Virus record (IMG/VR): IMGVR_UViG_3300036715_004471
Span: 382,542-446,541 of that record
Strand: one strand, 5' to 3'
Length of the DNA stretch: 64,000 nucleotides
In this document: positions 26,009 through 43,329 of the stretch, one piece after another
How positions within the stretch are numbered: the first letter of the stretch is position 1
Layout of the letters: the number at the start of each line of letters is the position of its first letter
Program-made: the position numbers and the translations under genes
The notes under the pieces: generated by a model
What the model saw: only the letters and a program-made list of their open reading frames with translations
What the model was told of the DNA's origin: nothing
Databases searched by the model: none

Positions 26009-26100
26009 TGGAGGAATGAGAGGGATTCGAACCCTCGGAACCCTTACGAGTCCACAACCTTTCCAGGGTTGCCGTTTCAGCCAAACTCACGCACCATTCC
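26009..26100 (-). tRNA. tRNA-Ser(GGA)
   Basis: Type II cloverleaf, loop CTGGAAA, CCA. Confidence 0.88.
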
Positions 26101-26560
26101 CTAATCTTCTTAAATAATGTTCTTCTGCATGACAATTAGGACATATCAATTCCAAATTATCTATATCATCAGAACCACCTTTTGATTTTTCTATTTTGTG
26201 ATGAATTTCCAAAATTTCTAGTTTTGAATAATTACATCTCTCACATTTATATCCTCGTAAATCAACTATTCTTTTTCTTAATTCACTAAGACTTTTTACT
26301 TTATCTTTTATTGGTCTTCCAGTTTTATATGTTGACCCAATTTTTTGTTTATTCGCACAAGCCCTACTACATGTTTTCTTATGTAAACCAGATTTAATTT
26401 GGTTATCACACATAGTGCATTTGTGTAATTTTTGCTGTGCTTTTCCCTTGCAATCATGAGAGCAATATACAGGACCTTTTGCTATTTGAAATGGTCTTCT
26501 ATAAATTTCCATAAAACAAACACTGCATGTACAATTTGGTTGACGTTGATATTTTTCCAT
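26087..26560 (-). CDS. HNH endonuclease with Zn-finger repeats
   Basis: LEIHHK..NLELICPNCH; stop codon inside tRNA-Ser. Confidence 0.9.
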   Translation of the reverse strand: MEKYQRQPNCTCSVCFMEIYRRPFQIAKGPVYCSHDCKGKAQQKLHKCTMCDNQIKSGLHKKTCSRACANKQKIGSTYKTGRPIKDKVKSLSELRKRIVDLRGYKCERCNYSKLEILEIHHKIEKSKGGSDDIDNLELICPNCHAEEHYLRRLGNGA

Positions 26561-26600
26561 ATCAAACTATATATCAACCACTCATGCATTAAACCATTTT

Positions 26601-26677
26601 TGGAGTCGTCGGTTCGATTCGAACAAACGAATACGAGTTTTGCAGACTCGCCCCTTAAGCCTCTTGGGTACAACGAC
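26601..26677 (-). tRNA. tRNA-Cys(GCA)
   Basis: Loop CTGCAAA, U73-CCA. Confidence 0.88.
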
Positions 26678-26701
26678 ATGTGCTTCTATATATCAGATTA
26701 T

Positions 26702-26971
26702 TCACAAGAATGATTTCAGATTTATCATTCTTAACATACCGGACTCTTTGAGATTTTTTCCGTGAAGTCGGTAAGTTACACTACCATCACGATATTCGTA
26801 AGCAATAACATTATCTACTGGCGGATATCCACTACCATCATGTTCTCCATGAAAATAGATAACAATATTCCCACCTTGACTATGAAGTGTTCTACTTTTT
26901 ATTTCTTTACCATTAGTGGTACAAAAATTCAAAATATCTTTATGAAGAGGATAATTATCTTGAGTGTTCAT
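26702..26971 (-). CDS. small protein ending ..NLKSFL
   Basis: ORF. Confidence 0.6.
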   Translation of the reverse strand: MNTQDNYPLHKDILNFCTTNGKEIKSRTLHSQGGNIVIYFHGEHDGSGYPPVDNVIAYEYRDGSVTYRLHGKNLKESGMLRMINLKSFL

Positions 26972-27491
26972 GTAATTTTTTATTGGCTAAGTTGAAATTA
27001 TTAAATCTTTTATCAGAAGTTACCTCTTCCACAATTTTAAGGTACGGAGGCAACTCTACTTTTTGATTCTTATCTTCTAATTCAATTTCAAGAATAGCAA
27101 GTCCTTTTAAAGCACTTTTGAAAACATCTAGCTCAAAAACCTGCTCATTATATTTGAAAACAAATCTGGTTTTATCTATGGTGACTTTATCTGGATGAGA
27201 TTTTTGCAAATACTTCTCGTATTGCTTTTCAGAAATCTCATGTTCTTTTTCTTCGTTGACACCATCTTCAACAAAGACTTTCTTATTAAAATGATAAACC
27301 GTCTCTTTATCACCCGTCAAACCTTCGACGGTTTTACGAACTCTAGCAGAAGGCTCTTTACCTTCCGGTTTGAGATAAGTCTGACTGATTCTTTTTACAT
27401 CAACCAACTCATCAAACATTTCTGCTAACTCGGACCAGTAAGATGGAAAGTTAACCAAAAATTTTCTTTCTATTTCTAATTGTTTTGCCAT
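26955..27491 (-). CDS. CYTH domain protein (triphosphate tunnel metalloenzyme)
   Basis: EIERKFLV, QTYL, RVR, KTR, ELD, LEIEL. Confidence 0.88.
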   Translation of the reverse strand: MAKQLEIERKFLVNFPSYWSELAEMFDELVDVKRISQTYLKPEGKEPSARVRKTVEGLTGDKETVYHFNKKVFVEDGVNEEKEHEISEKQYEKYLQKSHPDKVTIDKTRFVFKYNEQVFELDVFKSALKGLAILEIELEDKNQKVELPPYLKIVEEVTSDKRFNNFNLANKKLHEHSR

Positions 27492-27555
27492 TTTTCCCTT
27501 TTGAAATGAGCAAGATGCTCTCTTCAAAAGGACCGAACAAACGGTCCGAAAACAC

Positions 27556-27912
27556 TCAGTCTTCTGAATCCTCAGTAGGTTCGACTAGAGCAATCGATGG
27601 GTCGCGGGCGACCGATACTGTTTTGGAAGTTGTGGACTTAGCTAATTTAGCTGGCTTTGCTGTCTTCACCCCCTTTATAACGCCACCGTTCTTACCACGG
27701 GTTACATAAGCAATATCGCTGTTGTGTACGAAGTGATTTACAAAACCTAGCACGTGCTTTGGCTCCATAGCTACAGCAAGTCCTACAGTTTGTGCCAACT
27801 CCTTCAACTGAAGTCTTTCGCCATCATTCATCGAATCAACAGTTGCATGCGTTGCTTCAAAAATTCTTTCTACGGTTTCCAACATATTAGAGATACTTTT
27901 ATTCTTACTCAT
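27556..27912 (-). CDS. hypothetical, possible winged-helix protein (paralog of 62068..62496)
   Basis: IFEAT..YVTRGKNGGV vs VFAAT..HVTRGAHGGI. Confidence 0.6.
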   Translation of the reverse strand: MSKNKSISNMLETVERIFEATHATVDSMNDGERLQLKELAQTVGLAVAMEPKHVLGFVNHFVHNSDIAYVTRGKNGGVIKGVKTAKPAKLAKSTTSKTVSVARDPSIALVEPTEDSED

Positions 27913-27963
27913 TCTTATTCTCCAAAATTGCGGCACCCAAATCGGCGCCATTTGATAAATGGA

Positions 27964-27991
27964 ATATTAACCACCCCGCGACAAGCGTCAA
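27964..27991 (-). promoter_or_regulatory. sigma70-like promoter
   Basis: TTGACG-N16-TAATAT upstream of the 27912 start. Confidence 0.45.
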
Positions 27992-28058
27992 GCCTCCCCA
28001 AACATAAAAAATTAACAGACACAAAATCGCTTGGATAAGTGCCAGCGAGTTAAAAACT

Positions 28059-28415
28059 CTAAGCTTTACCTTTATGATTAGTGGGGGTAAATTTTGTAAT
28101 TGATTCAAACTTAATTGCTGGCGTAGTAGAAAGATGATTTCCTAATTGACAAGATTTGCCTTTATGTAAACCTGAATTGTTTTGCCAGAAACGCAAATAT
28201 TGTTCACGATCTTGAGTAGACTCAAACTTTAAAATAGTTGCCTGAGCCTGCTTACCGTCAGCGGCTTGAACGCCGGCGTATTTTATAACATTCTCCCGAG
28301 AGCAAGAGGGGCACTCGTTGATTCGACCTCCTGCTGCGCGTTTGGCAGAAGAAGATAAGTCAAATTCATCCTCACAATGAACACAAAAAACAATATTCTT
28401 CACTCTTTTTTCCAT
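28059..28415 (-). CDS. Zn-ribbon protein
   Basis: CxxC..CxxC. Confidence 0.6.
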   Translation of the reverse strand: MEKRVKNIVFCVHCEDEFDLSSSAKRAAGGRINECPSCSRENVIKYAGVQAADGKQAQATILKFESTQDREQYLRFWQNNSGLHKGKSCQLGNHLSTTPAIKFESITKFTPTNHKGKA

Positions 28416-28596
28416 TCACGATCTTCAATTAAAAGATCAAGCAATTGAGCCTCAAAAGATTCTGGAAGCCCTATTCTTTCTTTTATCAAATCTTGTTGAG
28501 TAGGTAACACATTATTTGATCTGTAGAAAGCATCTTCATCTAAACCTTCTTTGAAAATAAAAAGAAGGATATCTTTTATTTTTTCAGTCAGCATAT

Positions 28597-29136
28597 TTAT
28601 AGATTCCTTTTAAGGATATCCAGCTCTTCTGGAGAAAGTTTTTTCTTTAACTCACTCATCATCTTAATATCCTCAACAGATCTAAGAGCTTCTTTTTGTT
28701 TCTTCTTTTCTTTTTTCTCTTTTAATTGCAACTTACGCAATTTTTCTTTCTCATCAAACTTTTGTTTGCCCTCTATAAGTTCATCTTCAAAATCTTCAAA
28801 TAACCAACGAGATGGAAGAAGACCTTCATAAGACCATTCGGAACCATCTTTAAGCAAATAACTATATTCTTATATACCGCCATTACATTCAGTAACTATA
28901 GAATATATAGTATCGCCACTTATATGATTTCTTAAATTTCCTACTTCTCCTTCGGCAGCACCGTCAAAATACCAAGTACTTAACTTTGCTGACTCAAAAT
29001 CAAAAATAAAATTTAAAATATAATGTATACGATCAGTAATTTGTCCTTCTAATTCATCTGCTTCGCCTCGTTTTTGTTCCCAACGACTTGGCAAATCATT
29101 AGCTATTGGATCTATTTTTTCAATTGTTTTTTTCAT
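28597..29136 (-). CDS. hypothetical protein interrupted by in-frame TAA at 28870
   Basis: 28870..29136 and 28597..28857 are in the same frame (GGI*EYSYLLKDG). Confidence 0.5.
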
Positions 29137-29150
29137 AATTTTTATAAAAT

Positions 29151-29500
29151 GGAAGAGTTATTCTATAATCCGGGTTCTGTTATTTCAAACAATCATTAAT
29201 CTTGGCGAATAGTCACCTATTCGCTCCAGCACCAACCCGTAAACATCGGGCGAGTAACCCTCAAACGTTTACTATTTGGCTTGCTTCAAATGGGGTTTGC
29301 CGTGCCATGTTTGTTACCAAACATGCGGTGGGCTCTTACTCCACCATTTCACCCTTACCGGAAGCCGAAGCTTCTTAGGCGGTATCTTTCTGTTGCACTT
29401 TCCGTCGTGTCACCACGCCCAGCCGTTAACTGGCATTCTACTCTACGAAGCCCAGAATTTCCTCAGTCTTGCGACCGCGATTGCTCAAACAACTCTTTCC
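29151..29500 (-). ncRNA. rnpB: RNase P RNA (bacterial type A-like)
   Basis: GAGGAAATTCTGGGC, GGAAAGTGCAACAGAAA, AAGGGTGAAA, GGTAAC, AAACCCC..GAAGCAAG, ACAGAACCCGGATTAT; P1 GAGTTGTT/AATAACTC. Confidence 0.93.
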
Positions 29501-29814
29501 AAAGCTTTACGATAATGATGCGCTATTACATTTTTCAAATAAGAAAGAAATTTAGGAGGATAAGGCATTAGATCAATTCTAGACAAAATGTTGTCTCTTA
29601 CCAAAGATAACACGGGATTTTTAACTCTTCTATCAGAAATAACACTAATGCCTTTGAATTGGCAAGTAGCCATGTTGATAAAAGATAATACTCTATGTTT
29701 TTCGTAAGCGGGGATTAGATCTTGATTCATCAAATCCGCCAATACTTCACAAGCTTTGGTTCCGCCAAATGTATGCGGCTCTACATAAATGTATGTAGAC
29801 CAAGCCCTACTCAT
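29485..29814 (-). CDS. hypothetical protein
   Basis: ORF; stop overlaps 5' end of rnpB. Confidence 0.55.
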   Translation of the reverse strand: MSRAWSTYIYVEPHTFGGTKACEVLADLMNQDLIPAYEKHRVLSFINMATCQFKGISVISDRRVKNPVLSLVRDNILSRIDLMPYPPKFLSYLKNVIAHHYRKALERVV

Positions 29815-29817
29815 AAA

Positions 29818-30492: not shown

Positions 30493-30520
30493 TTTATCTT
30501 CCTCAATTTAGAATAATTTT

Positions 30521-31081
30521 TTATTCCCAAATATCACACAAATAATCAATTAACTCATCTCCACTAAAAGGAAATGCAGTTGCTACTACATATTTTCTTT
30601 TGTAGTATTCGCTATCTATAGCCTGCTGACTATCTAGTTTATCTATTAGTTTCAGCTGTAACATACGACTATATTTGCCAGCACACCCTCTGGAACAGAA
30701 TGGACCGGCTTTATTTTTCTTAGCTTTATCTCTAATCAGTCTAGGACTACGTTCAAATTCCTTATCACACCATGCACAATTGAATTTAACCAATTTTACA
30801 CGACGAGTATCGTCTCCAGAATGCTGAGAGCGCTCAACTAATCTCAAATTATTGAGATCATTGTTTTCAAAATTGCTATCAATATGATCAACAGTTTCTA
30901 GATTAGGATCTAATTTCCTTCCTAAATGAAGTTCCATAATCCATTTAGGATAGGAAACGGTCCTTCTCTTGCCCTTACGATCCACAACAATTACTATTTG
31001 TCTTGAATCTCTACGGCGATAAGGTCCAAAAACTTTGAATTTATCTGCATATTCCATACCATTATATGGTTTTATATGCAT
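30521..31081 (-). CDS. HNH endonuclease
   Basis: TVDHIDSN..NDLNNL. Confidence 0.85.
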   Translation of the reverse strand: MHIKPYNGMEYADKFKVFGPYRRRDSRQIVIVVDRKGKRRTVSYPKWIMELHLGRKLDPNLETVDHIDSNFENNDLNNLRLVERSQHSGDDTRRVKLVKFNCAWCDKEFERSPRLIRDKAKKNKAGPFCSRGCAGKYSRMLQLKLIDKLDSQQAIDSEYYKRKYVVATAFPFSGDELIDYLCDIWE

Positions 31082-31271
31082 TATGAAACGGAATAATTAT
31101 CCGGTGATAAGCGAGACATTCTCCTTCAAACAAAGTCTTGGACCTGGTTCTCCATCAATTTGAACTACAACCCTGCCATGCACAAATTCAATTACCGTTC
31201 CCGGACTAGAACCATTAGTAGAAATTGTGACTCTATCACCAATTTTAAATACATTGTTTTTCATATCAATC

Positions 31272-33203: not shown

Positions 33204-33281
33204 TGGCTGAGGAGGTAGGATTCGAACCTACATTACATCGTGATTCAAAGTCACGGATTCTGCCAGTTAAATTACTCCTCA
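33204..33281 (-). tRNA. tRNA-Gln(TTG)
   Basis: Loop CTTTGAA, CCA. Confidence 0.88.
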
Positions 33282-33763
33282 ATATTCGCGTTATCTAATG
33301 CCGAAAAAATGGCAGAATCTTCTGCTGCCAAAATATCACTTTTGCATTTATCTATTAAATCAAACCTTCTCTTCTTTATGTCACTTATTCTGATCGTAGG
33401 ATTAGAATAAATTTCAAAAAGCGGCATCCTTACTCTAACTCCCCTTGGAAAAGAGTTTCGTTTATTAAGCCTACCACTAGAATTTATAACTAGCTCACGA
33501 TGTTTATAAGCACCAACATTGAGTACAATGTTACAAACACCGGGCTCTTTATCATAGATCGGTAAAGCCCCAGAAGGTAATTGATCAATCAGAAAAGTTT
33601 TTCTGGCTATACCTTGATAATCTATTCTGGTTCTTAATGGCTGAATCATTGATTGCGCCAGCCTCATACGACCAGCCGCACTTGACAAGTAACTTCCAAT
33701 AAAACCAGGTTTAGTTCTTTTGTAGAGAGCGCCATCGGATGATATGAGAACAGGATGCTTCAT
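33272..33763 (-). CDS. truncated major-capsid-protein-like protein
   Basis: LAQSMIQPLRTRIDY..RKTFLIDQLPSGALPIYDKEP..PLFEI.SNP.I....IK.RRFDLI resembles large-phage HK97-fold MCPs (from memory; unverified). Confidence 0.55.
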   Translation of the reverse strand: MKHPVLISSDGALYKRTKPGFIGSYLSSAAGRMRLAQSMIQPLRTRIDYQGIARKTFLIDQLPSGALPIYDKEPGVCNIVLNVGAYKHRELVINSSGRLNKRNSFPRGVRVRMPLFEIYSNPTIRISDIKKRRFDLIDKCKSDILAAEDSAIFSALDNANIEE

Positions 33764-34021: not shown

Positions 34022-34097
34022 TGGTGGAGCTAAAGGGAGTCGAACCCTTAACCTCATCGCAGCCAGCGACGCGCTCTCCCAGTTGAGCTATAGCCCC
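34022..34097 (-). tRNA. tRNA-Ala(GGC)
   Basis: G3:U70, loop CTGGCTG, CCA. Confidence 0.92.
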
Positions 34098-34600
34098 AAT
34101 GTTCTTCTATTTATTCTTCTATTTTTGGTCCATCTCTCTTTAGATCTTCTATCAGCAATTGGAACACCAATATCAATCTCAACTACCGATGGACTCATCG
34201 ATAATTCTTTAATCTCATTCTTCATCAATCTCATTCTTGAAACTGAACTAGACAGTTTTACATTCACATCAAACGGACCTTCACTTTCTTGAAAAGCAAG
34301 GCACAAAAGAACAGTTAATTTGTCTAAGTTCATATACTGTTTAAGTTGAGAATCTTAATGAAAATTTGATAGTTCATAGCAGCCTTATATTATCAATTAT
34401 GACAGCTCGGCTCACAATCTTCATTGTGACAAACACCATCTGCAAGCCCCGCATCAGCAGTAAAATTACATACTGTGCCATCGCTTTTGCCCTGACATTG
34501 ATCGTCATTATATGTTACATCAGGAAATGTACAACCAACCAATGCAAAAAGCAAAATAACATTTAATAATTTCATCATAAATCTTTCTTAATGAATTCTA

Positions 34601-34676
34601 TGGTGGAGCTGGAGAGATTCGAACTCTCAACTTTTTGCTTGCAAAGCAAACACGCTGCCAATTGCGTCACAGCCCC
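34601..34676 (-). tRNA. tRNA-Ala(TGC)
   Basis: G3:U70, loop TTTGCAA, CCA. Confidence 0.9.
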
Positions 34677-35016
34677 ATAATCCTGCATGTATTTCTCTAT
34701 GACAATTAGAACACAATAGCAAACATTTATCAAGTTCTAATTTTGCTTTTTCTAAACCCCAATATCTCATACTTTGAAAAGTAGGGTCTTTATATTCGGG
34801 ATCTATATGATGAAATTCTAATGCCTCCATACATTTTGAATAATCACATTTTTGACACTTACCACCCTTATACTCGACATATAAAGATTTGTTTGTACGA
34901 CCCCTACTTATTGTATTTGTGTTGTGACAATTTTTGCATAAAGTTAAGCATTTTCTGCCCTGACCTTTATTCATCATTTTGTCAGGATCTGACTCCCCAC
35001 AAATTTTACATTTCAT
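34627..35016 (-). CDS. HNH endonuclease
   Basis: ALEFHHIDP..ELDKC.LLCSNCHRE; runs 50 nt into tRNA-Ala. Confidence 0.88.
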   Translation of the reverse strand: MKCKICGESDPDKMMNKGQGRKCLTLCKNCHNTNTISRGRTNKSLYVEYKGGKCQKCDYSKCMEALEFHHIDPEYKDPTFQSMRYWGLEKAKLELDKCLLLCSNCHREIHAGLWGCDAIGSVFALQAKS

Positions 35017-35018: not shown

Positions 35019-35100
35019 TGGTGGATTTGGAGAGAATCGAACTCTCAAACTCTGAAACTCTGAATGCAAATCAGAAATTATCCCATTTAATTACAAGCCC
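35019..35100 (-). tRNA. tRNA-Ala(TGC), atypical (8-nt duplication in variable region)
   Basis: G3:U70, loop TTTGCAT, AAACTCTG tandem repeat, CCA. Confidence 0.65.
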
Positions 35101-35304: not shown

Positions 35305-35389
35305 TGGTGGATCTGGAGGGACTCGAACCCGCGTAGGCTTTCGCCGAGAGCTTAAAAGGCTCTTGTCATTGCCGCTAGACAACAAATCC
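35305..35389 (-). tRNA. tRNA with Lys anticodon (TTT) and long variable arm
   Basis: AGAGC-CTTTTAA-GCTCT, V-arm GGC-GAAA-GCC, CCA. Confidence 0.8.
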
Positions 35390-37217: not shown

Positions 37218-37292
37218 TGGAGGGTTCGGAGGGACTTGAACCCTCAACAAACTGGTTAAAAGCCAGCTACTCTGCCATTGAGTTACGAACCC
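37218..37292 (-). tRNA. tRNA-Lys(TTT)
   Basis: Cloverleaf, loop CTTTTAA, CCA. Confidence 0.92.
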
Positions 37293-37294
37293 AT

Positions 37295-37558
37295 TTATAC
37301 GCCGTTAATCTTCTTAGAAGTCCAATCATGGAAATCAAAAGTCGATTTACACGGAAAAACTCCAATCAAAGGATGTGCAATGCAATTATGCACAAACCAC
37401 CAACTATGATGTTTGTAGACAGGCTTCTCTTCCTGCTTATATCCTTCGATACGTTTATGAAACCTCATTTCGGCTCCCGACTCATCAGAGTTTGGGAATT
37501 CCTTTTCTTCCTTCTTCGGTTTCACTTCGCCATCTTCTTCATCATATTCCCAAAACAT
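37295..37558 (-). CDS. hypothetical protein
   Basis: WWFVHNCIAHPL..FHDWT. Confidence 0.6.
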   Translation of the reverse strand: MFWEYDEEDGEVKPKKEEKEFPNSDESGAEMRFHKRIEGYKQEEKPVYKHHSWWFVHNCIAHPLIGVFPCKSTFDFHDWTSKKINGV

Positions 37559-37602
37559 TTTATTATCTTTCTATGTTTGTGGTTTGGTAGGGCAACGGGT
37601 AT

Positions 37603-38394
37603 GTGAAAATATATTTTCACATATCAATATTATCATACATATGTATGTTTCAACTATTTACACAAGAGCAATTACAAACTTCCAGATCAAATGATTTGTT
37701 ACCATTAAAATGTCAACAATGCTCTAAAACATTTTTAATATCTAAAAAGTACATAACACAAGTTCTCAATGGTAAATCTAGCCGAGGGTATAAACTACAT
37801 TTTTGTAGTTCTAAATGTTCACAATTGTCAAGAACTACTTCTGAAATTTTTTCATGCACTTTTTGTGATAATCCATTAAAAATGAAATTATCACAAAAAC
37901 AAAGATCAAAATCTGGAAATATTTTTTGTTCTAAATCGTGCGCAGCTAAATATAATAACACTCATAAAACTAAAGGTAGCAGGCGTTCTAAACTTGAAAT
38001 TTGGTTAGAGCAACAACTTTTATCATCTTACCAACAATTAAAAATACAATTCAATTGCAAAGAAACTATCAATTCTGAATTAGATATTTATATTCCAAGT
38101 TTAAAATTAGCATTTGAGTTAAATGGCATCTTTCATTATGAGCCAATTTATGGTTCAGAAAAATTGGCTTCCATTCAAAATAATGATAACAGGAAATTTC
38201 AAGCCTGTTTAGAACAAGACATTGAGCTTGTTATTATAGATACGTCATCTCAAAAATATTTTAAAGAAAAAACATCACAAAAATATCTTAAAATTATAAA
38301 AGATATAATTGATAATAAACTAAATTACTGGTCGTCCCCCCGAGATTCGAACTCGGCACCTCTGCCTTATCAGAGCAGCGTTCTAACCAAATGA
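37603..38394 (+). CDS. Zn-finger + PD-(D/E)xK/Vsr-like endonuclease
   Basis: FCSxxC repeats; ELDIYIPSLKLAFELNGIFHY. Confidence 0.8.
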   Translation: MKIYFHISILSYICMFQLFTQEQLQTSRSNDLLPLKCQQCSKTFLISKKYITQVLNGKSSRGYKLHFCSSKCSQLSRTTSEIFSCTFCDNPLKMKLSQKQRSKSGNIFCSKSCAAKYNNTHKTKGSRRSKLEIWLEQQLLSSYQQLKIQFNCKETINSELDIYIPSLKLAFELNGIFHYEPIYGSEKLASIQNNDNRKFQACLEQDIELVIIDTSSQKYFKEKTSQKYLKIIKDIIDNKLNYWSSPRDSNSAPLPYQSSVLTK

Positions 38395-38405
38395 ACTAGA
38401 GGACG
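38329..38405 (-). tRNA. tRNA-Ile(GAT)
   Basis: Loop CTGATAA, CCA. Confidence 0.9.
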
Positions 38406-38410
38406 GTTAT

Positions 38411-38504
38411 TGTGGATACACAGGGAATCGAACCCTACGCTAGCCTGCTTTCGACTCCTTTCTACCCACCTTGGTAGGTGGACAATGGCGGGCTCTCTAT
38501 ACCC
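38411..38504 (-). ncRNA. D-armless tRNA-like RNA with G3:U70
   Basis: GGGTATA/TGTATCC acceptor, T arm, long central stem. Confidence 0.55.
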
Positions 38505-38508
38505 AAGT

Positions 38509-38586
38509 TGGTGGACACATTGGGAGTCGAACCCAATTTTTCCCGACAATTGTCCGAGCTTTTCATAGGGACGGGTTACTGTGCCC
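38509..38586 (-). ncRNA. D-armless tRNA-like RNA with G3:U70, A73-CCA
   Basis: GGGCACA/TGTGTCC-ACCA, TTGGG-TTCGACT-CCCAA. Confidence 0.6.
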
Positions 38587-38793
38587 AAAATCTTAAACAC
38601 TAAAAATGAGTACGATATCTTCTCCGCCTTCCTTAATAAAAGCATCATAACTCATACTACACGGAGCGTTGAACCAAACATAATTGTTATTATCAATAGT
38701 CCATGTCAACTTTCTATCAGGATTAAATCTAACTTCTTTATCATCTTCCATGATATAAGTGCCAAATTTGTCCATCTTGATCTGTCTTTTCAT

Positions 38794-38869
38794 TGGTGGT
38801 ACCTAACAGGATCGAACTGTTTTCGTCCGCTTTTCAGACGGCGGTCTTGACCACAAATACGAAGGTACC
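38794..38869 (-). tRNA. tRNA-Phe(GAA)
   Basis: Loop CTGAAAA, CCA; weak D and AC stems. Confidence 0.75.
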
Positions 38870-38878
38870 ATATTTGTC

Positions 38879-38953
38879 TGGTGGCTCCTGTTGGTATCGC
38901 GCCAACATTTCCTGCTCTTCAGGCAGGCGCTAATCTATTTCAGCTAAGGAGCC
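38879..38953 (-). tRNA. tRNA-Phe(GAA)
   Basis: Loop CTGAAGA, CCA; atypical T-loop. Confidence 0.8.
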
Positions 38954-38958
38954 ATGTT

Positions 38959-39033
38959 GTAGTTTAATAAGGGCTCGAACCTTAATATATTTTTGTATAT
39001 CGTTTCCACGAGTACTCATAAACATTAAACTAC
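38959..39033 (-). ncRNA. tRNA-like RNA with extended closing stem, no CCA
   Basis: GTAGTTTAAT/ATTAAACTAC, TAAGG-TTCGAGC-CCTTA. Confidence 0.5.
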
Positions 39034-39111
39034 TGGTCGGGCGAGTGGGGATCGAACCCACCTCAAGGTGCTTATAAGACACCCGGATGCAACCAGCTTA
39101 CCTTTCACCCG
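39034..39111 (-). tRNA. tRNA-Ile(TAT)
   Basis: GGTGT-CTTATAA-GCACC, CCA. Confidence 0.82.
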
Positions 39112-39117
39112 GTTGAC

Positions 39118-39291
39118 TCACCAAAGATTATAGTGGCAGGCGAAACATTCGAATAAAAATGTTGAAGATTTTGGTTTTTCTTTAACCATTACTACTTCAT
39201 CATCTTCATTATTTTCATAATGACCGCTCACCATTCTCTTGCAACGATGGCATTCATAAGTAAAATCGCAAGACTTCTCTTCGTTTTCCAT
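39118..39291 (-). CDS. 57-aa Zn-ribbon protein (below ORF-track cutoff)
   Basis: MENEEKSCDFTYECHRCK..FECFACHYNLW. Confidence 0.55.
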   Translation of the reverse strand: MENEEKSCDFTYECHRCKRMVSGHYENNEDDEVVMVKEKPKSSTFLFECFACHYNLW

Positions 39292-39309
39292 GTTGTTTCT
39301 TTCTTTGGC

Positions 39310-39385
39310 TGGCAGGTGTAACGGGTGCTGCCCCCGCTTGGTCTTGCTCGACAGGCAAGTGCAATTGCTGAATTGCTATACACCT
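39310..39385 (-). tRNA. tRNA-Asp(GTC)
   Basis: Loop CTGTCGA, G73-CCA; atypical T-loop. Confidence 0.8.
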
Positions 39386-39388
39386 ATA

Positions 39389-39463
39389 TGGCACCCCCGA
39401 GCGGACTCGAACCGCCCTCATCTGCGTGACAAGCAGACCGCCTCACCCGATGCGTACGGGGGT
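39389..39463 (-). tRNA. tRNA-Asp(GTC)
   Basis: Loop TTGTCAC, G73-CCA. Confidence 0.87.
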
Positions 39464-39483
39464 ATGTTATACAATATATCACT

Positions 39484-39885
39484 TTATTCGTAGATGAAAG
39501 GTCTTTCTAATCTCCCAATTGTTAAATGAAACCAAGGCTTAAACGGAAAGCCTAACATTTCTCTGACTGCCGACAATTCTTCTGAATAAACATCAATCCG
39601 GGCATGGATTCCATTTTCGAATCTTATCACATGGTTGTAATAAAAATCTACTTCGTATCCCTCCAACTTACCCCAGGCTGATGGGTCAGTGACGGTCTCG
39701 CCGCGAACAACTGAGATATGTGTTCCCCACAACCCTTTTGGATTAGATTCTATTCCATATTTTTTCAAATGCCAAGAATAATACTCAGCAATTTGATCGT
39801 CACACGAAAGTAAACACCACCAAGGTTCAAATTGTTTAGATCCTTTTTTCAAATCGAAATGAAGTGTTCCAGATGAACTAAACAT
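39484..39885 (-). CDS. 2H phosphoesterase family protein (paralog of 9782..10183)
   Basis: WGTHISVVRGE..FHLTIGR. Confidence 0.75.
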   Translation of the reverse strand: MFSSSGTLHFDLKKGSKQFEPWWCLLSCDDQIAEYYSWHLKKYGIESNPKGLWGTHISVVRGETVTDPSAWGKLEGYEVDFYYNHVIRFENGIHARIDVYSEELSAVREMLGFPFKPWFHLTIGRLERPFIYE

Positions 39886-39906
39886 GGCTTGTGTCTTTCA
39901 AAAATT

Positions 39907-40076
39907 TGATGACTAGAAATCGTAAAGACGAAGTTTATTGAATTGAATGACCAATCAACAATAATATGGTATTACAGTTTTAACCTTCTGATAATAATAC
40001 AGGACATTCTATTTATTCTCTTAGAAATGCTTGGAGGTTATTGTTATTATTTATGTAGTCCTTACTGCATTCATCA
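39907..40076 (-). ncRNA. Y-RNA-like module with long AT-rich insert
   Basis: TGATG-AATGC-AGTAAGG-ACTACAT..CTTTAC-GATTTCTAGT-CATCA. Confidence 0.65.
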
Positions 40077-40155
40077 TGGTCCGCCCCGCCGGGGTTTCAC
40101 CAGCATTTCCGCCTCATGGCAGCGTCTTGACTATTTAGACGATGGATAGATATTA

Positions 40156-40231
40156 TGGCGATACGTGTGGGAATCGAACCCACCGTCATCCGCTTAACAG
40201 GCGGGCGCTGCACCAAGCCAGCTAACGTACC
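40156..40231 (-). tRNA. tRNA-Asn(GTT)
   Basis: Loop CTGTTAA, CCA. Confidence 0.85.
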
Positions 40232-40356
40232 ATTTAGTTATGTTAGAGTCGGTTACGGTAGATCTTTGCCGTCACTCTCTCTAATCCTAGAGTCAAAGTC
40301 TAGATGCTCTTACATTACATAACAAGGTAACATATTTTCGAAGATATGTTTTCCTT

Positions 40357-40432
40357 TGGCTCATCCCCTCAGATTCGAACTGAGATATCACGAGTTAACA
40401 GCCCGCCTCACGACCAATTGTGATAAGGATGA
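40357..40432 (-). tRNA. tRNA-Asn(GTT)
   Basis: Loop CTGTTAA, CCA. Confidence 0.8.
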
Positions 40433-40435
40433 ATA

Positions 40436-40583
40436 TATTGACGAGAATTGTAAAGATTCGCTGCGCCCTGCACTTTTGTCTTGCGACCCACTTGTGCTAC
40501 CACTCATGCGAGTCTTTGAGTGGATGGGATTCGATACCCATACCATCGAGCATTTTCTATGTAATCCTTAACGTATTCACTAT
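40436..40583 (-). ncRNA. YrlA-like Y RNA (Ro stem + permuted T/acceptor/D arms)
   Basis: Conserved stem plus ATGGG-TATCGAAT-CCCAT, CCACTCA/TGAGTGG closed acceptor, D-like arm. Confidence 0.75.
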
Positions 40584-40586
40584 CAA

Positions 40587-40740
40587 CAATAAACTGAGAG
40601 GAACAGCTCTGACAATAATAACCCTCTTGCCAGTCAGCGGAGCTCGTTTACGTTTTACTTCAAACACGAACAAATTGAAGGTTTTCGGTAATCCATTTCA
40701 ACCGAGACTGTTTTAACCCATTCCTAATCGCAGCTTACTG
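40587..40740 (-). ncRNA. unknown structured RNA
   Basis: CAGTAAGCTG/CAGTTTATTG and AGGAATGG/CTGTTCCT closing helices with 3 internal hairpins. Confidence 0.45.
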
Positions 40741-40741
40741 C

Positions 40742-40817
40742 TGGCTCCGTGGGTACGATTCGAACGTACATATCATTGGTTAACAGCCAATTTCATTGCC
40801 AGTTATGATACCACGGA
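40742..40817 (-). tRNA. tRNA-Asn(GTT)
   Basis: Loop CTGTTAA, CCA. Confidence 0.87.
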
Positions 40818-40926
40818 ATGATGCCAGCGATATGAGTTTAAGCCCACATTCTATTGTCCCCTATATGGACATACTGACAAAGAAAAGTCAACGAGTATAT
40901 ATATCTAGAATAATAGTCATTGACGT

Positions 40927-41142
40927 CTAGTCTTCAACTTTCATTTCATCGATTATGAGATATCTTCCCTGAGATACCCATAACGTTGATCTGTCTCTGG
41001 TCCAAGGACTTGCATGTGGTAAGTCCTTGCAATCTTGCTCGATATATTCTTCAACGTATTTCTCGGCTGATTCGAAAGATTTGAATGCCTTTTGAATATC
41101 ACTACCTTCGTAATCATAGCCCAAAGATACTAAAAAGATCAT
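40927..41142 (-). CDS. hypothetical protein
   Basis: 71-aa ORF inside tRNA array. Confidence 0.55.
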   Translation of the reverse strand: MIFLVSLGYDYEGSDIQKAFKSFESAEKYVEEYIEQDCKDLPHASPWTRDRSTLWVSQGRYLIIDEMKVED

Positions 41143-41156
41143 AAATCAACTTTCTT

Positions 41157-41232
41157 TGGTCGGGGACACGGGATTTGAACCCACACCACATGATTCCGGA
41201 TCACGTACGCTACCAAGTTACGCCAATCCCCG
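41157..41232 (-). tRNA. tRNA-Pro(CGG)
   Basis: C1:G72, A73; loop TCCGGAA. Confidence 0.8.
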
Positions 41233-41234
41233 AT

Positions 41235-41310
41235 ATCAAAATACGTCAGGAATCGAACCTGAACTGTGGGGTGATTACCCCAATCCTGCCCTTAGACGAC
41301 ATATTTTGAT
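41235..41310 (-). ncRNA. tRNA-like RNA with extended closing stem, 6-nt loop, no CCA
   Basis: ATCAAAATATG/CGTATTTTGAT, TGGGG-TAATCA-CCCCA, TCAGG-TTCGATT-CCTGA. Confidence 0.55.
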
Positions 41311-41386
41311 TGGTCGGGGAACTCAGATTTGAACTGAGACTACATGCTTCCTGAGCACGGATGCTACCAGATTACAACATTCCCCG
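41311..41386 (-). tRNA. tRNA-Pro(AGG)
   Basis: C1:G72, A73; loop TCAGGAA. Confidence 0.78.
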
Positions 41387-41389
41387 ATT

Positions 41390-41465
41390 TTGACGACAAA
41401 ATGAAATAAGTTATTTTGATTCGGTTTATAAGACTGAAATGTAAACCTAATTTCTCATTCGTCAA
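41390..41465 (-). ncRNA. short Y-RNA-like module
   Basis: TTGACG-AATGA..AGG-TTTACAT..ATTTTGT-CGTCAA. Confidence 0.7.
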
Positions 41466-41466
41466 T

Positions 41467-41542
41467 TGGTCGGGAATGCCGGATTTGAACCGACACAAGA
41501 TGATTCCAGATCACCGAGACTACCAAATTATCATAATTCCCG
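41467..41542 (-). tRNA. tRNA-Pro(TGG)
   Basis: Loop TCTGGAA, CCA. Confidence 0.78.
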
Positions 41543-41563
41543 AAAATATAACCCCATGGTTAT

Positions 41564-41648
41564 TGGCGGATCTGGAGAGACTCGAACTCTCGATGGGTTT
41601 CCCCGACTGGTTAAGAGCCAGCTGTTATTGCCACTAAACGACAGATCC
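41564..41648 (-). tRNA. tRNA with Lys anticodon (CTT) and long variable arm
   Basis: GCTGG-CTCTTAA-CCAGT, V-arm GGG-GAAA-CCC, G73-CCA. Confidence 0.82.
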
Positions 41649-41656
41649 ATTCTTAA

Positions 41657-41804
41657 AGACAACAAAAATTGAAAGTTATCACGCCTTTCGGCTTCAACGC
41701 GTTTGCCTTTTCGCCACCACCAACAGTAAGTCGATGGGAGGGACTCGAACCCTCAAACCTTTTCAGATATTGATTTTAATATGTAAACCTTCTGACATTT
41801 GTCT
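41657..41804 (-). ncRNA. YrlA-like Y RNA
   Basis: Conserved stem plus GAGGG-TTCGAGT-CCCTC, CCATCGAC/GTTGGTGG closed acceptor, TGGCGAAAAGGCAAACGC D arm. Confidence 0.8.
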
Positions 41805-41813
41805 AGAAGAAGC

Positions 41814-41889
41814 TGGTCGAGCATATTGGATTTGAACCACCCTACATCGCCCCAAACGACGTGTGCAACCAGGCTACACTTTATGCTCG
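41814..41889 (-). tRNA. tRNA-Pro(TGG)
   Basis: Loop TTTGGGG, CCA. Confidence 0.78.
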
Positions 41890-42236
41890 ATTAATTTTTC
41901 TTCATAATGCTCTATTCTGTGGCAATTTGCACACAGAACTTTACATTTAGAAATCTCATTCATAATCTTTTCTTTAGACTTACCACTTTGTACTAGATTA
42001 GTTACTTCTGTAAGTTTTTGTGTTGGATCTATGTGATGGAAATCTAAAACTCTCCAATCACTAATCTCACATTTGAGTAACTTCCTATACTCTATAAACC
42101 ATTCTCTTTTTTCTTTACGAATACGATATTTCGTGGCTTTATCTTTTTTCTTATAATCTTCTCTGTGCTTATTGTTTTCATACCATTGTCTCCAATAAGC
42201 TCGTCTTTCTTCAACGCTGTTAAATTTCTTAGCCAT
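41874..42236 (-). CDS. HNH endonuclease
   Basis: VLDFHHIDP..EISKCKVLCANCHR; stop inside tRNA-Pro. Confidence 0.85.
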   Translation of the reverse strand: MAKKFNSVEERRAYWRQWYENNKHREDYKKKDKATKYRIRKEKREWFIEYRKLLKCEISDWRVLDFHHIDPTQKLTEVTNLVQSGKSKEKIMNEISKCKVLCANCHRIEHYEEKLIEHKV

Positions 42237-42254
42237 GCTAAGAATATATCAGCT

Positions 42255-42333
42255 TGGTCGGGCATGCTGGATTTGAACCAGCAAAATCTCCTGTACCCAA
42301 AACAGGCGCGATACCAGATTACGCTAATGCCCG
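42255..42333 (-). tRNA. tRNA-Pro(TGG)
   Basis: Loop TTTGGGT, CCA. Confidence 0.88.
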
Positions 42334-42386
42334 ATCTATATTGTTTCATTCCCGCATCAAAAAGCGCAGAAACAATTAAACTGCCT

Positions 42387-42473
42387 TGGTCCCCCATAGT
42401 GGAATCGAACCACATAGCACATAGGCACTCGTTTTACAGACGAGGGATCCTCCCAGGGATCTAGTTACAGGGG
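42387..42473 (-). tRNA. tRNA-Tyr(GTA), atypical C1:G72
   Basis: CTCGT-CTGTAAA-ACGAG, CCA. Confidence 0.75.
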
Positions 42474-42562
42474 ATAATTTCAACTGATTGTGTGGCGCCC
42501 GACATTCAGTAGGAGCACATAATCGCCTGGTGTCCCTACTTATTCAATTGAAGTTAAACTTA

Positions 42563-42619
42563 GCTGACAAAAATTGATAAGTTTTTACAACCCAAATGTA
42601 AACCTATCGAGCATTCAGC
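42563..42619 (-). ncRNA. minimal Y-RNA-like module
   Basis: GCTG-AATGC-TCGATAGG-TTTACAT..CTTATC-AATTTTTGT-CAGC. Confidence 0.7.
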
Positions 42620-42695
42620 TGGAGTCGAAAGTAGGAATCGAACCTACTGTGACAGTTTTGCAGACTGTTCCTCAAAGCCATCGAGGACTTTCGAC
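42620..42695 (-). tRNA. tRNA-Cys(GCA)
   Basis: Loop CTGCAAA, U73-CCA. Confidence 0.85.
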
Positions 42696-42747
42696 TTATC
42701 AAGGCTCTCGCCTTGGTCCAACCACCGAAGTGAATTGGGGGATGTTA

Positions 42748-42809
42748 GACGACAAAAATTGAATAAGATGTTGTTTATCCTAAAATGTAATCCTATTCTA
42801 GCATTCGTC
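42748..42809 (-). ncRNA. minimal Y-RNA-like module
   Basis: GACG-AATGC-TAGAATAGG-ATTACAT..CTTATTC-AATTTTTGT-CGTC. Confidence 0.7.
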
Positions 42810-42810
42810 A

Positions 42811-42884
42811 TGGTTGGGATGTATGGATTCGAACCATAATAAGAAGATTCAAAGTCTTCTGTCCTGCCGTTGAACGACACCCCA
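42811..42884 (-). tRNA. tRNA-Gln(TTG)
   Basis: Loop CTTTGAA, CCA. Confidence 0.92.
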
Positions 42885-42888
42885 ATAA

Positions 42889-43329
42889 TTATCTACCCAA
42901 TCTCCACCAACCAAAATCTTTAGCAGTTTTTCTTCTGTGACAATTTGCGCATCTAACAACACATTTAGATATTTCTAAAGCTATTTTATCTAAGGATGCG
43001 CAATCATTAATCATACTGGAAATGCTGCATTCTTTATTTTCAAGATGATCAAAATCCAAAACAATCAAATCTTTTTCACCACAATCCACACAACCATTTT
43101 TTAGATGTGAAACAATAAAATCTTGTATTAAAGGCTTTAATGTTTCTTTTCTATTATAAATACGTTGTTTTACTTTTTCAGTATTAAGTAAGTAATGTTT
43201 CTTACCATTTTCTAAATTGCACAACTTACAAAGATTTTGTCTTCCATCTTTAGATAATTTCTTTTTGTTAAAATCATCTAGCGATTTTTTATCTTTACAG
43301 ATTGTACAAACTTTGAATTCTTCACTCAT
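42889..43329 (-). CDS. HNH endonuclease
   Basis: CVDCGE..VLDFDH..EISKCVVRCANCHR. Confidence 0.88.
   Translation of the reverse strand: MSEEFKVCTICKDKKSLDDFNKKKLSKDGRQNLCKLCNLENGKKHYLLNTEKVKQRIYNRKETLKPLIQDFIVSHLKNGCVDCGEKDLIVLDFDHLENKECSISSMINDCASLDKIALEISKCVVRCANCHRRKTAKDFGWWRLGR

What the first reader, a model, noticed from the sequence alone, without database searches (positions are those of the whole stretch)
26009..43329. HNH genes whose stop codons lie inside the downstream tRNA
Seen: 26087..26560 ends 14 nt inside tRNA-Ser, 34627..35016 ends 50 nt inside tRNA-Ala, and 41874..42236 ends 16 nt inside tRNA-Pro. 42889..43329 stops 4 nt before tRNA-Gln. Two of them sit between same-anticodon tRNA pairs (Ala-TGC, Pro-TGG). 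33272..33763 and 29485..29814 similarly end inside tRNA-Gln and rnpB. Inference: 5' processing removes the stop codon and gives non-stop mRNA, limiting toxic nuclease expression; the flanking pairs suggest tRNA-targeted homing with duplication.
Basis: partly seen in the sequence, partly recalled or inferred. Interest (0 to 1): 0.62.

Follow-up and report, generated by a model that had tools for sequence, protein, structure and literature searches.

The report
Mobile HNH nuclease genes between phage tRNAs
Selfish HNH homing-endonuclease genes have wedged themselves into the gaps of a giant phage's tRNA gene array so tightly that several run on into the next tRNA before reaching a stop codon, an arrangement already known from phages T5 and T4.

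Summary
The coordinates are right. Three HNH genes end 14, 50 and 16 nt inside tRNA-Ser, tRNA-Ala and tRNA-Pro. A fourth stops 4 nt before tRNA-Gln. The window is the end of a 446-kb microbial-mat megaphage record with 56 tRNAs and its own RNase P RNA.

All four HNH genes are optional. Close relatives (G005, G006, and a strain in run X4) have the same flanking tRNAs with no HNH between them. At three loci the downstream tRNA is unusually diverged. The HNH plus tRNA-Ser unit is shared with another 452-kb phage at higher identity than its flanks. This fits freestanding homing endonucleases that co-convert neighbouring tRNA genes.

The Ala-TGC and Pro-TGG pairs also exist in the HNH-free alleles and their members are only 68-70% identical. 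The insertion therefore did not duplicate them.

The stop-in-tRNA overlap is not specific to nucleases:
- Other ORFs here do the same.
- It shifts between orthologues.
- It occurs about as often as an unconstrained stop position predicts.

Phage T5 hegC and hegD overlap tRNAs in the same way. The idea that tRNA processing throttles expression was published for T4 segB and T5 in 2008. No RNA data exist to test it here. Verdict: a new member of a known kind, of modest interest.

The parts
26087..26560 (-). HNH endonuclease gene (PF01844 / phrog_1271 type) filling the tRNA-Cys to tRNA-Ser spacer. Its TGA stop lies 14 nt inside tRNA-Ser(GGA).
   Evidence: Absent from G005, where Cys and Ser are 4 nt apart. 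An 86% identical copy with the same 14-nt overlap is in L111 and L112.
26009..26100 (-). tRNA-Ser(GGA) downstream of the HNH gene. It looks co-transferred with the HNH.
   Evidence: 45.8 bits. 80% identical to the G005 orthologue but 90% to the HNH-linked copy in L111.
26601..26677 (-). tRNA-Cys(GCA), the upstream boundary of the Ser-HNH insertion.
   Evidence: 94% identical to the G005 orthologue.
25415..25873 (-). Second HNH gene of the same type, downstream of tRNA-Ser(GGA).
   Evidence: phrog_1271, 3e-14. Its counterpart L114 also sits just after a tRNA-Ser(GGA).
25911..25999 (-). Degenerate tRNA-Ser(TGA)-like remnant, in the position where G005 has an intact tRNA-Ser(TGA).
   Evidence: Alignment. 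ARAGORN does not call it.
34627..35016 (-). HNH gene (phrog_2255/3106 type) starting 2 nt after the CCA of tRNA-Ala #1. The TGA stop lies 50 nt inside tRNA-Ala #2, so the last 16 residues are encoded by the tRNA.
   Evidence: The 62% homologue L010 ends 4 aa after the HNH motif. AlphaFold pLDDT falls to 62-75 over the tail. Absent from G005.
34601..34676 (-). tRNA-Ala(TGC) #2, downstream of the HNH gene.
   Evidence: 69.6 bits. Only 75% identical to the G005 orthologue.
35019..35100 (-). tRNA-Ala(TGC) #1, upstream of the HNH gene. It is 82 nt long because of a 10-nt tandem duplication.
   Evidence: The G005 orthologue is 72 nt.
41874..42236 (-). HNH gene (phrog_3106/2255 type). It lacks the N-terminal Cys pairs of its paralogues. 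The TAG stop lies 16 nt inside tRNA-Pro #B.
   Evidence: In G006 and in run X4 it is replaced by a 112-116-nt broken tRNA-like gene, with boundaries at 41893 and 42255.
41814..41889 (-). tRNA-Pro(TGG) #B, downstream of the HNH gene.
   Evidence: 31.8 bits. 99% identical to the G006 orthologue.
42255..42333 (-). tRNA-Pro(TGG) #A, upstream of the HNH gene.
   Evidence: 99% identical to the G006 orthologue.
42889..43329 (-). HNH gene (phrog_2255, 3e-30) with its own TAA stop 4 nt before tRNA-Gln.
   Evidence: Absent from G006, where Met and Gln are 12 nt apart. Run X4 skips 42771-43366.
42811..42884 (-). tRNA-Gln(TTG) downstream of the HNH gene, a divergent allele.
   Evidence: 80% identical to the G006 orthologue, with compensatory stem changes. 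The flanking tRNA-Met is 99% identical and the 3' flank about 95%.
43366..43437 (-). tRNA-Met(CAT), the upstream boundary of the Gln-HNH insertion.
33272..33763 (-). Non-nuclease ORF (phrog_2522) ending 10 nt inside tRNA-Gln 33204-33281.
   Evidence: The G005 orthologue ends 1 nt before the tRNA.
29485..29814 (-). ORF with no known family, ending 12 nt inside RNase P RNA.
   Evidence: The junction is identical in G005.
29150..29496 (-). Phage-borne RNase P RNA, bacterial class A.
   Evidence: 288 bits. Also present in G005 and G002.
34088..34333 (-). Non-nuclease 81-aa ORF ending 10 nt inside tRNA-Ala(GGC) 34022-34097.
38370..38648 (-). Non-nuclease 92-aa ORF ending 36 nt inside tRNA-Ile(GAT) 38329-38405.
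   Evidence: No equivalent ORF abuts the tRNA in G005.
30521..31081 (-). A further HNH gene (phrog_14913), upstream of the rnpB neighbourhood.
   Evidence: The region is conserved in G005.

Best explanation
These are freestanding HNH homing-endonuclease genes of two families that have colonised the spacers of a megaphage's tRNA array.

Shown:
- Each gene lies on the tRNA strand and fills the whole gap, from the CCA end of one tRNA to the 5' end of the next.
- The conserved nuclease core ends 7-17 codons before that tRNA, about where homologues normally end.
- Where no stop codon happens to fall in those few codons, the frame runs on to the first in-frame stop inside the tRNA.
- The genes are optional between close relatives.

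Inferred:
- They spread by cutting HNH-less arrays in or near tRNA genes and being copied in during repair.
- The neighbouring tRNA allele is often carried along (co-conversion), with the conserved tRNAs serving as homology arms.
- The stop-in-tRNA overlap is a by-product of this flush packing, not a conserved device.
- Because the genes must be co-transcribed with the tRNAs, 5' maturation of the downstream tRNA would strip the stop codon from some transcripts and probably lowers nuclease output. That is a plausible side effect and nothing here demonstrates it.
For: HNH identity:
- Pfam and PHROG matches.
- The family keeps invariant Cys/Asn/His motif residues.
- The model has pLDDT 86.5 and its only structural neighbours are HNH nucleases, all weak.

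Mobility, from HNH-free alleles with intact flanking tRNAs at all four loci:
- G005: Cys, 4 nt, Ser; and Ala, 73 nt, Ala.
- G006: Pro, 116 nt, Pro; and Met, 12 nt, Gln.
- Run X4 independently joins 41893 to 42255 and 42771 to 43366, while X2 and X3 carry the HNH-plus form.

Linkage to the downstream tRNA:
- Ser is 0.80, Ala 0.75 and Gln 0.80 identical to the orthologue, against a median of 0.94 for other orthologous tRNAs (one-sided p=0.08).
- The window and L111 share HNH plus tRNA-Ser at 84% nt identity, with the tRNA at 90%, but their flanks at 75%. G005 shares the flanks at 84% but lacks the HNH.
- The HNH genes have 28-32% GC against 37.6% for the region. The copy at genome 99.7 kb has 40% GC against flanks of 53-56%.

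Family-wide tRNA association:
- 43/80 and 14/15 IMG/VR loci have tRNAs nearby.
- 20/80 have a tRNA starting within 50 nt of the stop.
- Homologues from cultured phages sit between tRNAs, for example Dandelion and Paradiddles.

Overlap as a by-product:
- The tail after the motif has a median of 13 aa in homologues that are not next to a tRNA.
- The tRNA starts a median of 15 aa-equivalents after the motif in those that are.
- 14/26 run into the tRNA, against 7-18 expected if the stop position is unconstrained.
- Non-nuclease ORFs overlap tRNAs too.

Precedent: T5 hegC and hegD overlap tRNAs by 14 and 23 nt. SegB homing co-converts tRNA genes (PMC2330249).
Against: - No cleavage activity or target site is known for any of these proteins.
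- The Pro-locus HNH lacks the N-terminal zinc-finger cysteines and one core cysteine, and its flanking tRNAs are 99% conserved. It may be inactive, or inserted by another route.
- tRNA alleles also swap where no HNH is adjacent: tRNA-Arg 43987-44059 is only 64% identical to its G006 orthologue.
- The co-divergence test is only suggestive (p=0.08).
- Presence/absence cannot tell gain from loss.
- Foldseek hits are all above E=0.03.
Confidence: 0.8

Rival explanations
1. Placing the stop codon inside the tRNA is a selected throttle. RNase P, possibly the phage's own RNase P RNA, cuts at the tRNA 5' end, the nuclease mRNA becomes non-stop, and trans-translation destroys most of the toxic product.
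For: - Three of four HNH genes in the window, and 15/28 across the family, end inside the tRNA.
- There is no room for a terminator, so the genes must be co-transcribed with the tRNAs.
- The phage carries rnpB.
- The same mechanism was proposed for T4 segB and the T5 F-Tfl genes (PMC2330249).
- The 14-nt Ser overlap is retained in L111 and L112.
Against: - The overlap is not significantly more frequent than in non-nuclease ORFs (p=0.12).
- It matches a neutral expectation.
- Its length ranges from 2 to 146 nt, and many homologues stop 2-30 nt before the tRNA.
- The Gln-locus HNH has its own stop.
- L115 lost the 14-nt stop and reads through the whole tRNA.
- No tmRNA is found in the record.
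- No RNA data exist.
Confidence: 0.15
2. Homing into a tRNA gene duplicated it, creating the same-anticodon pairs that flank the Ala and Pro HNH genes.
For: - Two of four HNH genes sit between same-anticodon tRNAs.
- SegB can drive segmental amplification of tRNA genes (PMC13096335).
Against: - Both pairs exist in the HNH-free alleles of G005 and G006.
- Pair members are 68-70% identical, like any other isoacceptors.
- Chance placement has p=0.16.
Confidence: 0.05
3. The nucleases are domesticated. The phage keeps them because they shuffle or amplify tRNA genes, which helps it escape tRNA-targeting host defences, as shown for SegB.
For: - There are about 17 HNH-like genes in the record, and about 10 are next to tRNAs.
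- The array is mosaic, with many redundant tRNAs and odd tRNA-Lys variants.
- Published SegB precedent (PMC13096335).
Against: - The genes are dispensable in close relatives.
- No amplified segments or recent tRNA duplicates are seen.
- Nothing ties them to a defence system.
Confidence: 0.2
4. Some copies are decaying relics whose own stop codons were lost, and the overlap is simply degeneration.
For: - The Pro-locus copy lacks the N-terminal Cys pairs and one core Cys.
- A split HNH remnant lies at genome 13037-13290.
- The tails are not conserved.
Against: - The frames are intact.
- The catalytic motif residues are invariant in all four.
- The Ser cassette is conserved at 86% aa identity in other phages.
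Confidence: 0.12

Closest known systems
Phage T5 hegC and hegD (the HNH endonucleases of the T5 tRNA gene region, F-Tfl enzymes)
   Same: They are HNH genes on the tRNA strand inside a phage tRNA cluster, and their stop codons lie inside the downstream tRNA. hegC ends 14 nt into tRNA-Ser(GGA) and hegD ends 23 nt into tRNA-Gln. Down-regulation through transcript processing has been proposed for them (PMC2330249).
   Different: There is no specific sequence relationship to the window's Ser-locus HNH (BLASTP E of 0.4 or more). The T5 enzymes carry NUMOD-type domains. The host and phage lineage differ.
Phage T4 SegB, a GIY-YIG homing endonuclease in the tRNA cluster
   Same: It is a freestanding homing endonuclease gene between tRNA genes and is absent from close relatives. 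It targets tRNA genes (the T-psi-C motif) and co-converts flanking tRNA genes. Its stop codon lies at the edge of tRNA-Arg, with a proposed processing cut between the last sense codon and the stop. Its homologues are widely associated with tRNAs.
   Different: It has a GIY-YIG fold, not HNH. In RefSeq segB stops 5 nt before tRNA-Arg and does not end inside it. Its activity and homing are demonstrated experimentally; nothing is demonstrated here.
HNH genes in the tRNA arrays of Mycobacterium cluster C phages and Streptomyces phages
   Same: They belong to the same protein family, at 41-43% identity to 42889-43329. Dandelion gp160 lies between tRNA-Pro(TGG) and tRNA-Trp, and its annotated CDS runs through the whole tRNA-Trp. 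The Paradiddles copy lies between two tRNA-Thr genes. Such genes have been suggested to spread tRNA clusters (PMC6409571).
   Different: These are actinophages of 130-157 kb with one or two matches to this HNH per genome. The window's phage has three copies of this family plus others. No HNH-free alleles were compared for them here.
Mitochondrial tRNA punctuation
   Same: In both, an mRNA is bounded directly by tRNAs, so tRNA excision defines its ends and can remove or truncate the stop codon. This comparison rests on general knowledge.
   Different: In mitochondria polyadenylation completes the stop codon. Only one of the junctions read here (Ala) would allow that (read from the sequence), which is what chance gives.

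Membership tests
Freestanding homing endonuclease gene | Encodes a nuclease of a homing-endonuclease fold (here HNH) | tested here: met
   PF01844 at 1e-13. PHROG HNH families at 1e-20 to 3e-30. Motif residues are invariant.
Freestanding homing endonuclease gene | Intergenic, not inside an intron or intein | tested here: met
   Each gene lies between two complete tRNA genes.
Freestanding homing endonuclease gene | Present or absent at the same locus in otherwise homologous close relatives | tested here: met
   All four loci have HNH-free alleles in G005, G006 or run X4.
Freestanding homing endonuclease gene | Co-conversion of flanking markers | tested here: inconclusive
   The downstream tRNA is diverged at 3 of 4 loci (p=0.08). 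The Ser cassette is shared with L111 above flank identity. However, the Pro locus shows none, and tRNA-Arg swaps without an HNH nearby.
Freestanding homing endonuclease gene | Site-specific cleavage of the HNH-less allele | not testable with these tools
   Needs purified protein and DNA substrates.
T4 SegB-type tRNA-targeting homing endonucleases | GIY-YIG catalytic domain | tested here: not met
   Only HNH families match.
T4 SegB-type tRNA-targeting homing endonucleases | Recognition of the tRNA T-psi-C motif | not testable with these tools
   The differences between HNH-plus and HNH-minus tRNA alleles are spread along the tRNA and point to no single site.
T5 hegC/hegD HNH endonucleases | Sequence homology beyond the HNH motif | tested here: not met
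   BLASTP E=0.38 and 0.99. Only the Ser-locus HNH was compared.
T5 hegC/hegD HNH endonucleases | HNH ORF in the tRNA cluster ending inside the downstream tRNA | tested here: met
   The window overlaps are 14, 50 and 16 nt. The T5 overlaps are 14 and 23 nt.
Non-stop mRNA / trans-translation control | Processed transcripts that lack a stop codon, and tagged protein products | not testable with these tools
   No RNA run holds this phage. No tmRNA is found in the record.

The most novel reading that the evidence does not exclude
The stop-in-tRNA junction is a selected switch. Maturation of the downstream tRNA, boosted by the phage's own RNase P RNA, converts homing-endonuclease mRNAs into non-stop messages. 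Nuclease dosage would then be coupled to tRNA-processing capacity during infection, as a bacterial-virus counterpart of mitochondrial tRNA punctuation.
Probability: 0.12. Interest if true: 0.55.

Novelty: new member of a known kind. Interest (0 to 1): 0.3.

Why it matters
- It extends the T4/T5 picture of homing endonucleases living in phage tRNA clusters to uncultured megaphages, and to an HNH family shared with actinophages.
- It supplies four natural pairs of HNH-plus and HNH-minus alleles with exact insertion boundaries. These are ready-made substrates for mapping cut sites.
- It gives evidence that nuclease plus tRNA units move as cassettes, which would help explain why phage tRNA arrays are so mosaic.
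- It shows that ORFs ending inside tRNAs are a general feature of these packed arrays. Annotators and modellers of expression should expect this and need not treat it as special.

Tried and rejected
- Megablast of the region against GenBank phages found no match.
- DNA comparison with four other huge phage records matched only tRNAs, so they give no usable alleles.
- TAG recoding was checked because the record has two tRNA-CUA genes. TAG is a rare stop, but read-through of TAG-terminated ORFs gave no convincing fused proteins. The standard code was kept, and no other code was used in any search.
- The sigma-70 promoter scan gave chance-level counts. No convincing minus-strand terminator lies between an HNH gene and its tRNA.
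- RNA evidence: no RNA run holds the stretch.
- Foldseek against the PDB returned only weak hits (E of 0.04 or more), all of them HNH nucleases.
- Homology of the Ser-locus HNH to T5 hegC/hegD was rejected.
- Polyadenylation completing a stop after RNase P cleavage would work only at the Ala junction, and was set aside as chance.

Full report
**Setting.** The window is the last 64 kb of a 446,541-bp IMG/VR virus record with 38.7% GC. Public runs place it in microbial-mat and sediment metagenomes. The record carries 56 tRNA genes, all on the minus strand, and 38 of them are in the window. A full-length bacterial class A RNase P RNA lies at 29150-29496 (288 bits). GenBank phages hold nothing similar at the DNA level.

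**Observation.** Every coordinate in the finding is reproduced.

| ORF (minus strand) | Stop | Position relative to the downstream RNA gene |
|---|---|---|
| 26087-26560 | TGA | 14 nt inside tRNA-Ser(GGA) |
| 34627-35016 | TGA | 50 nt inside tRNA-Ala(TGC) |
| 41874-42236 | TAG | 16 nt inside tRNA-Pro(TGG) |
| 42889-43329 | TAA | 4 nt before tRNA-Gln(TTG) |
| 33272-33763 | TAA | 10 nt inside tRNA-Gln |
| 29485-29814 | TGA | 12 nt inside rnpB |

- The first four are HNH nucleases. The Ser-locus gene matches Pfam PF01844 at 1e-13. The other three match PHROG HNH families 2255 and 3106 at 1e-20 to 3e-30.
- The last two are not HNH genes: one matches phrog_2522 and the other matches nothing.
- An AlphaFold model of the Ala-locus protein is confident (pLDDT 86.5) except over the 16 tRNA-encoded residues (62-75). 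Its only structural neighbours are HNH nucleases, all weak.

**The genes are optional.** Two IMG/VR contigs are close, syntenic relatives: G005 (94 kb, 82-90% nt identity) and G006 (33.6 kb, 77-96%).

| Locus | HNH-free relative | Arrangement there | Arrangement in the window |
|---|---|---|---|
| Ser | G005 | tRNA-Cys and tRNA-Ser(GGA) 4 nt apart | 500 nt apart, holding the HNH |
| Ala | G005 | the two tRNA-Ala(TGC) genes 73 nt apart, no HNH | HNH between them |
| Pro | G006 | the two tRNA-Pro(TGG) genes 116 nt apart | HNH between them |
| Gln | G006 | tRNA-Met and tRNA-Gln 12 nt apart | HNH between them |

- Laying contigs of four public runs on 38001-44000 gave independent support. Run X4 holds a 95-99% identical strain that joins 41893 to 42255 with 112 other letters in between, and joins 42771 to 43366.
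- Runs X2 and X3 carry the HNH-containing form letter for letter.
- The Pro-locus insertion therefore runs exactly from the base after the CCA of the upstream tRNA to 4 nt before the downstream tRNA.
- What it replaces in G006 is a broken tRNA-like gene: Rfam tRNA 38.8 bits, a 49-nt insert in the D-loop and a 4-nt anticodon loop.

**Linkage with the downstream tRNA.**
- Orthologous tRNAs of the window and G005/G006 are mostly 0.85-1.00 identical (median 0.94).
- The tRNAs just downstream of the Ser, Ala and Gln HNH genes are 0.80, 0.75 and 0.80 identical. The Gln difference includes compensatory stem changes, while the tRNA-Met upstream is 0.99.
- The Pro locus is the exception, at 0.99.
- The rank test is only suggestive (one-sided p=0.08). 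One tRNA with no HNH beside it, tRNA-Arg at 43987-44059, is also swapped (0.64).
- The clearest case is Ser. A 452-kb record (L111) and a 349-kb record (L112) carry an 86% identical HNH with the same 14-nt overlap and a 90% identical tRNA-Ser.
- That cassette matches the window at 84% nt, but the flank matches at only 75%. G005 matches the flank at 84% yet lacks the HNH and has the 80% tRNA. This incongruence points to horizontal movement of an HNH plus tRNA unit.
- The HNH genes are also AT-rich: 28-32% GC against 37.6% for the region.

**Both families are tied to tRNAs across phages.**
- I retrieved 80 IMG/VR loci of the 2255/3106-type family. Of these, 43 have a tRNA within 2.5 kb and 20 have a same-strand tRNA starting within 50 nt of the stop. 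Nine end inside that tRNA and 14 start within 50 nt after one.
- Of 15 loci of the Ser-type family, 14 have tRNAs close by. All relatives at 45-86% identity sit beside a tRNA-Ser(GGA).
- The nearest cultured homologues (41-43% identity) are in the tRNA arrays of Mycobacterium cluster C phages and Streptomyces phages. The annotated CDS of Dandelion gp160 runs through the whole downstream tRNA-Trp.
- A fourth copy of the family lies at genome 99657-100130 and ends 27 nt inside a tRNA-Lys. It sits in a GC-rich block of the record that may not belong to the same genome.

**Is the stop-in-tRNA overlap special?** The evidence says no.
- In this record seven ORFs of 80 aa or more end inside a tRNA, and three of them are not nucleases.
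- Pooling the record with the 80 loci, 15/28 HNH ORFs and 10/32 other ORFs that abut a tRNA overlap it (Fisher p=0.12).
- Overlap lengths range from 2 to 65 nt in one family. In L115 the frame reads through an entire tRNA.
- Homologues that are not next to a tRNA end a median of 13 residues after the CxxxC[AS]NCH motif. In tRNA-adjacent homologues the tRNA begins a median of 15 residue-equivalents after it. The tRNA starts where the protein would end anyway.
- With an unconstrained stop position, 7-18 of 26 such ORFs should run into the tRNA. The observed number is 14.
- The 62% identical homologue L010, which has no downstream tRNA, ends 4 residues after the motif.
- The G005 orthologue of 33272-33763 ends 1 nt before its tRNA. 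The rnpB overlap is conserved only because the junction sequence is identical.

**The duplication idea.**
- The Ala(TGC) and Pro(TGG) pairs exist in the HNH-free alleles.
- Their members are 68% and 70% identical, no closer than other isoacceptors.
- Because the array is arranged in amino-acid blocks, 7 of 37 adjacent intervals are same-anticodon. Two of four insertions landing in such intervals has p=0.16.
- The insertion did not create the pairs.

**Mechanism.**
- Shown: HNH identity, flush placement, optional presence, family-wide tRNA association, and lability of the stop position.
- Inferred: spread by cleavage of HNH-less arrays and repair from an HNH-bearing genome, with the conserved tRNAs acting as homology arms and the adjacent tRNA often co-converted.
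- Plausible but undemonstrated: 5' processing of the downstream tRNA removes the stop codon from co-transcripts and lowers nuclease yield.
- No RNA run holds the phage. Promoter and terminator scans were uninformative.

**Comparison with known systems.**
- Phage T5 hegC ends 14 nt inside tRNA-Ser(GGA), and hegD ends 23 nt inside tRNA-Gln.
- T4 SegB is a GIY-YIG homing endonuclease in the T4 tRNA cluster. It recognises the T-psi-C motif of tRNA genes and co-converts neighbouring tRNAs.
- Its authors proposed in 2008 that maturation of tRNA-Arg cuts the segB message between the last sense codon and the stop. They noted a similar proposal for the T5 enzymes (PMC2330249).
- In RefSeq segB stops 5 nt before tRNA-Arg.
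- A 2026 study shows that SegB homologues are widely associated with tRNAs and can amplify tRNA genes (PMC13096335).
- The window's Ser-locus HNH is not specifically related to hegC or hegD.
- The finding is therefore a new member of a known kind: the same arrangement and the same hypothesis, in different HNH lineages and in a megaphage.

**Constraints followed.** The standard genetic code was used throughout. The reads call stayed at 6,000 letters. The costly protein searches were not needed.

Noticed in passing
window 29150-29496 (-); G005:80431-80777; G002:80398-80750: The phage carries a full-length bacterial class A RNase P RNA (288 bits) inside its tRNA region. It is conserved in a close relative and present in a more distant 252-kb virus record, but absent from three other huge phage records. 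One full-text literature search listed no paper on phage-encoded RNase P RNA.
   Followed up: partly
window 35305-35389 and 41564-41648 (-): Two 85-nt tRNAs with Lys anticodons (UUU, CUU) have a class-II-like long variable arm, with discriminators A73 and G73. Both are conserved in G005 (94% and 80%). This architecture is unusual for tRNA-Lys. They could be mis-charging tRNAs or nuclease-resistant variants.
   Followed up: partly
genome G000:C1:15230-15303 and 320811-320884 (outside the window): Two tRNAs have the CUA anticodon (amber suppressors). TAG ends only 28 of 449 long minus-strand ORFs. Read-through tests gave no clear sign of recoding.
   Followed up: partly
genome G000:C1: about 27,000-126,000 (outside the window): This block has 45-65% GC, in a record that is otherwise 29-38% GC. 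IMG/VR flags the record as a provirus. The block may be an assembly chimera or a large foreign island. The fourth copy of the HNH family lies in it and is far more AT-rich than its flanks.
   Followed up: partly
L106:9401-9512 (G006); 112 letters in run X4 between window 41893 and 42255: The HNH-free allele of the Pro locus holds a broken tRNA-like gene in place of the HNH: Rfam tRNA 38.8 bits, a 49-nt insert in the D-loop and a 4-nt anticodon loop.
   Followed up: partly
window 35019-35100 (-): tRNA-Ala(TGC) #1 carries a 10-nt tandem duplication in its variable region (82 nt against 72 nt in G005) and a C4-A69 mismatch. It may be impaired.
   Followed up: partly
window 25911-25999 (-): A degenerate tRNA-Ser(TGA)-like sequence that ARAGORN does not call lies where G005 has an intact tRNA-Ser(TGA). 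An HNH gene sits on each side of the tRNA-Ser block.
   Followed up: partly
window 34393-34578 (-): A 61-aa lipoprotein-like ORF follows tRNA-Ala #2 and is absent from G005. The Ala-locus insertion therefore seems to include more than the HNH.
   Followed up: no
window 43987-44059 (-): tRNA-Arg(TCT) is only 64% identical to its syntenic G006 counterpart although no HNH is adjacent. tRNA alleles in this array are also exchanged without a neighbouring nuclease gene.
   Followed up: no
window 41237-41307 and 42620-42695 (-): ARAGORN reports a tRNA with an undetermined two-base anticodon at 41237-41307. The tRNA-Cys at 42620-42695 scores as tRNA-Sec in Rfam, just at threshold (47.2 against 47 bits).
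   Followed up: no
window 39484-39885 (-): A 133-aa protein (phrog_12204) with a weak match to a 2H phosphoesterase domain sits inside the tRNA array. It is 95% conserved in G005 and is a possible RNA-repair or RNA-processing factor.
   Followed up: no
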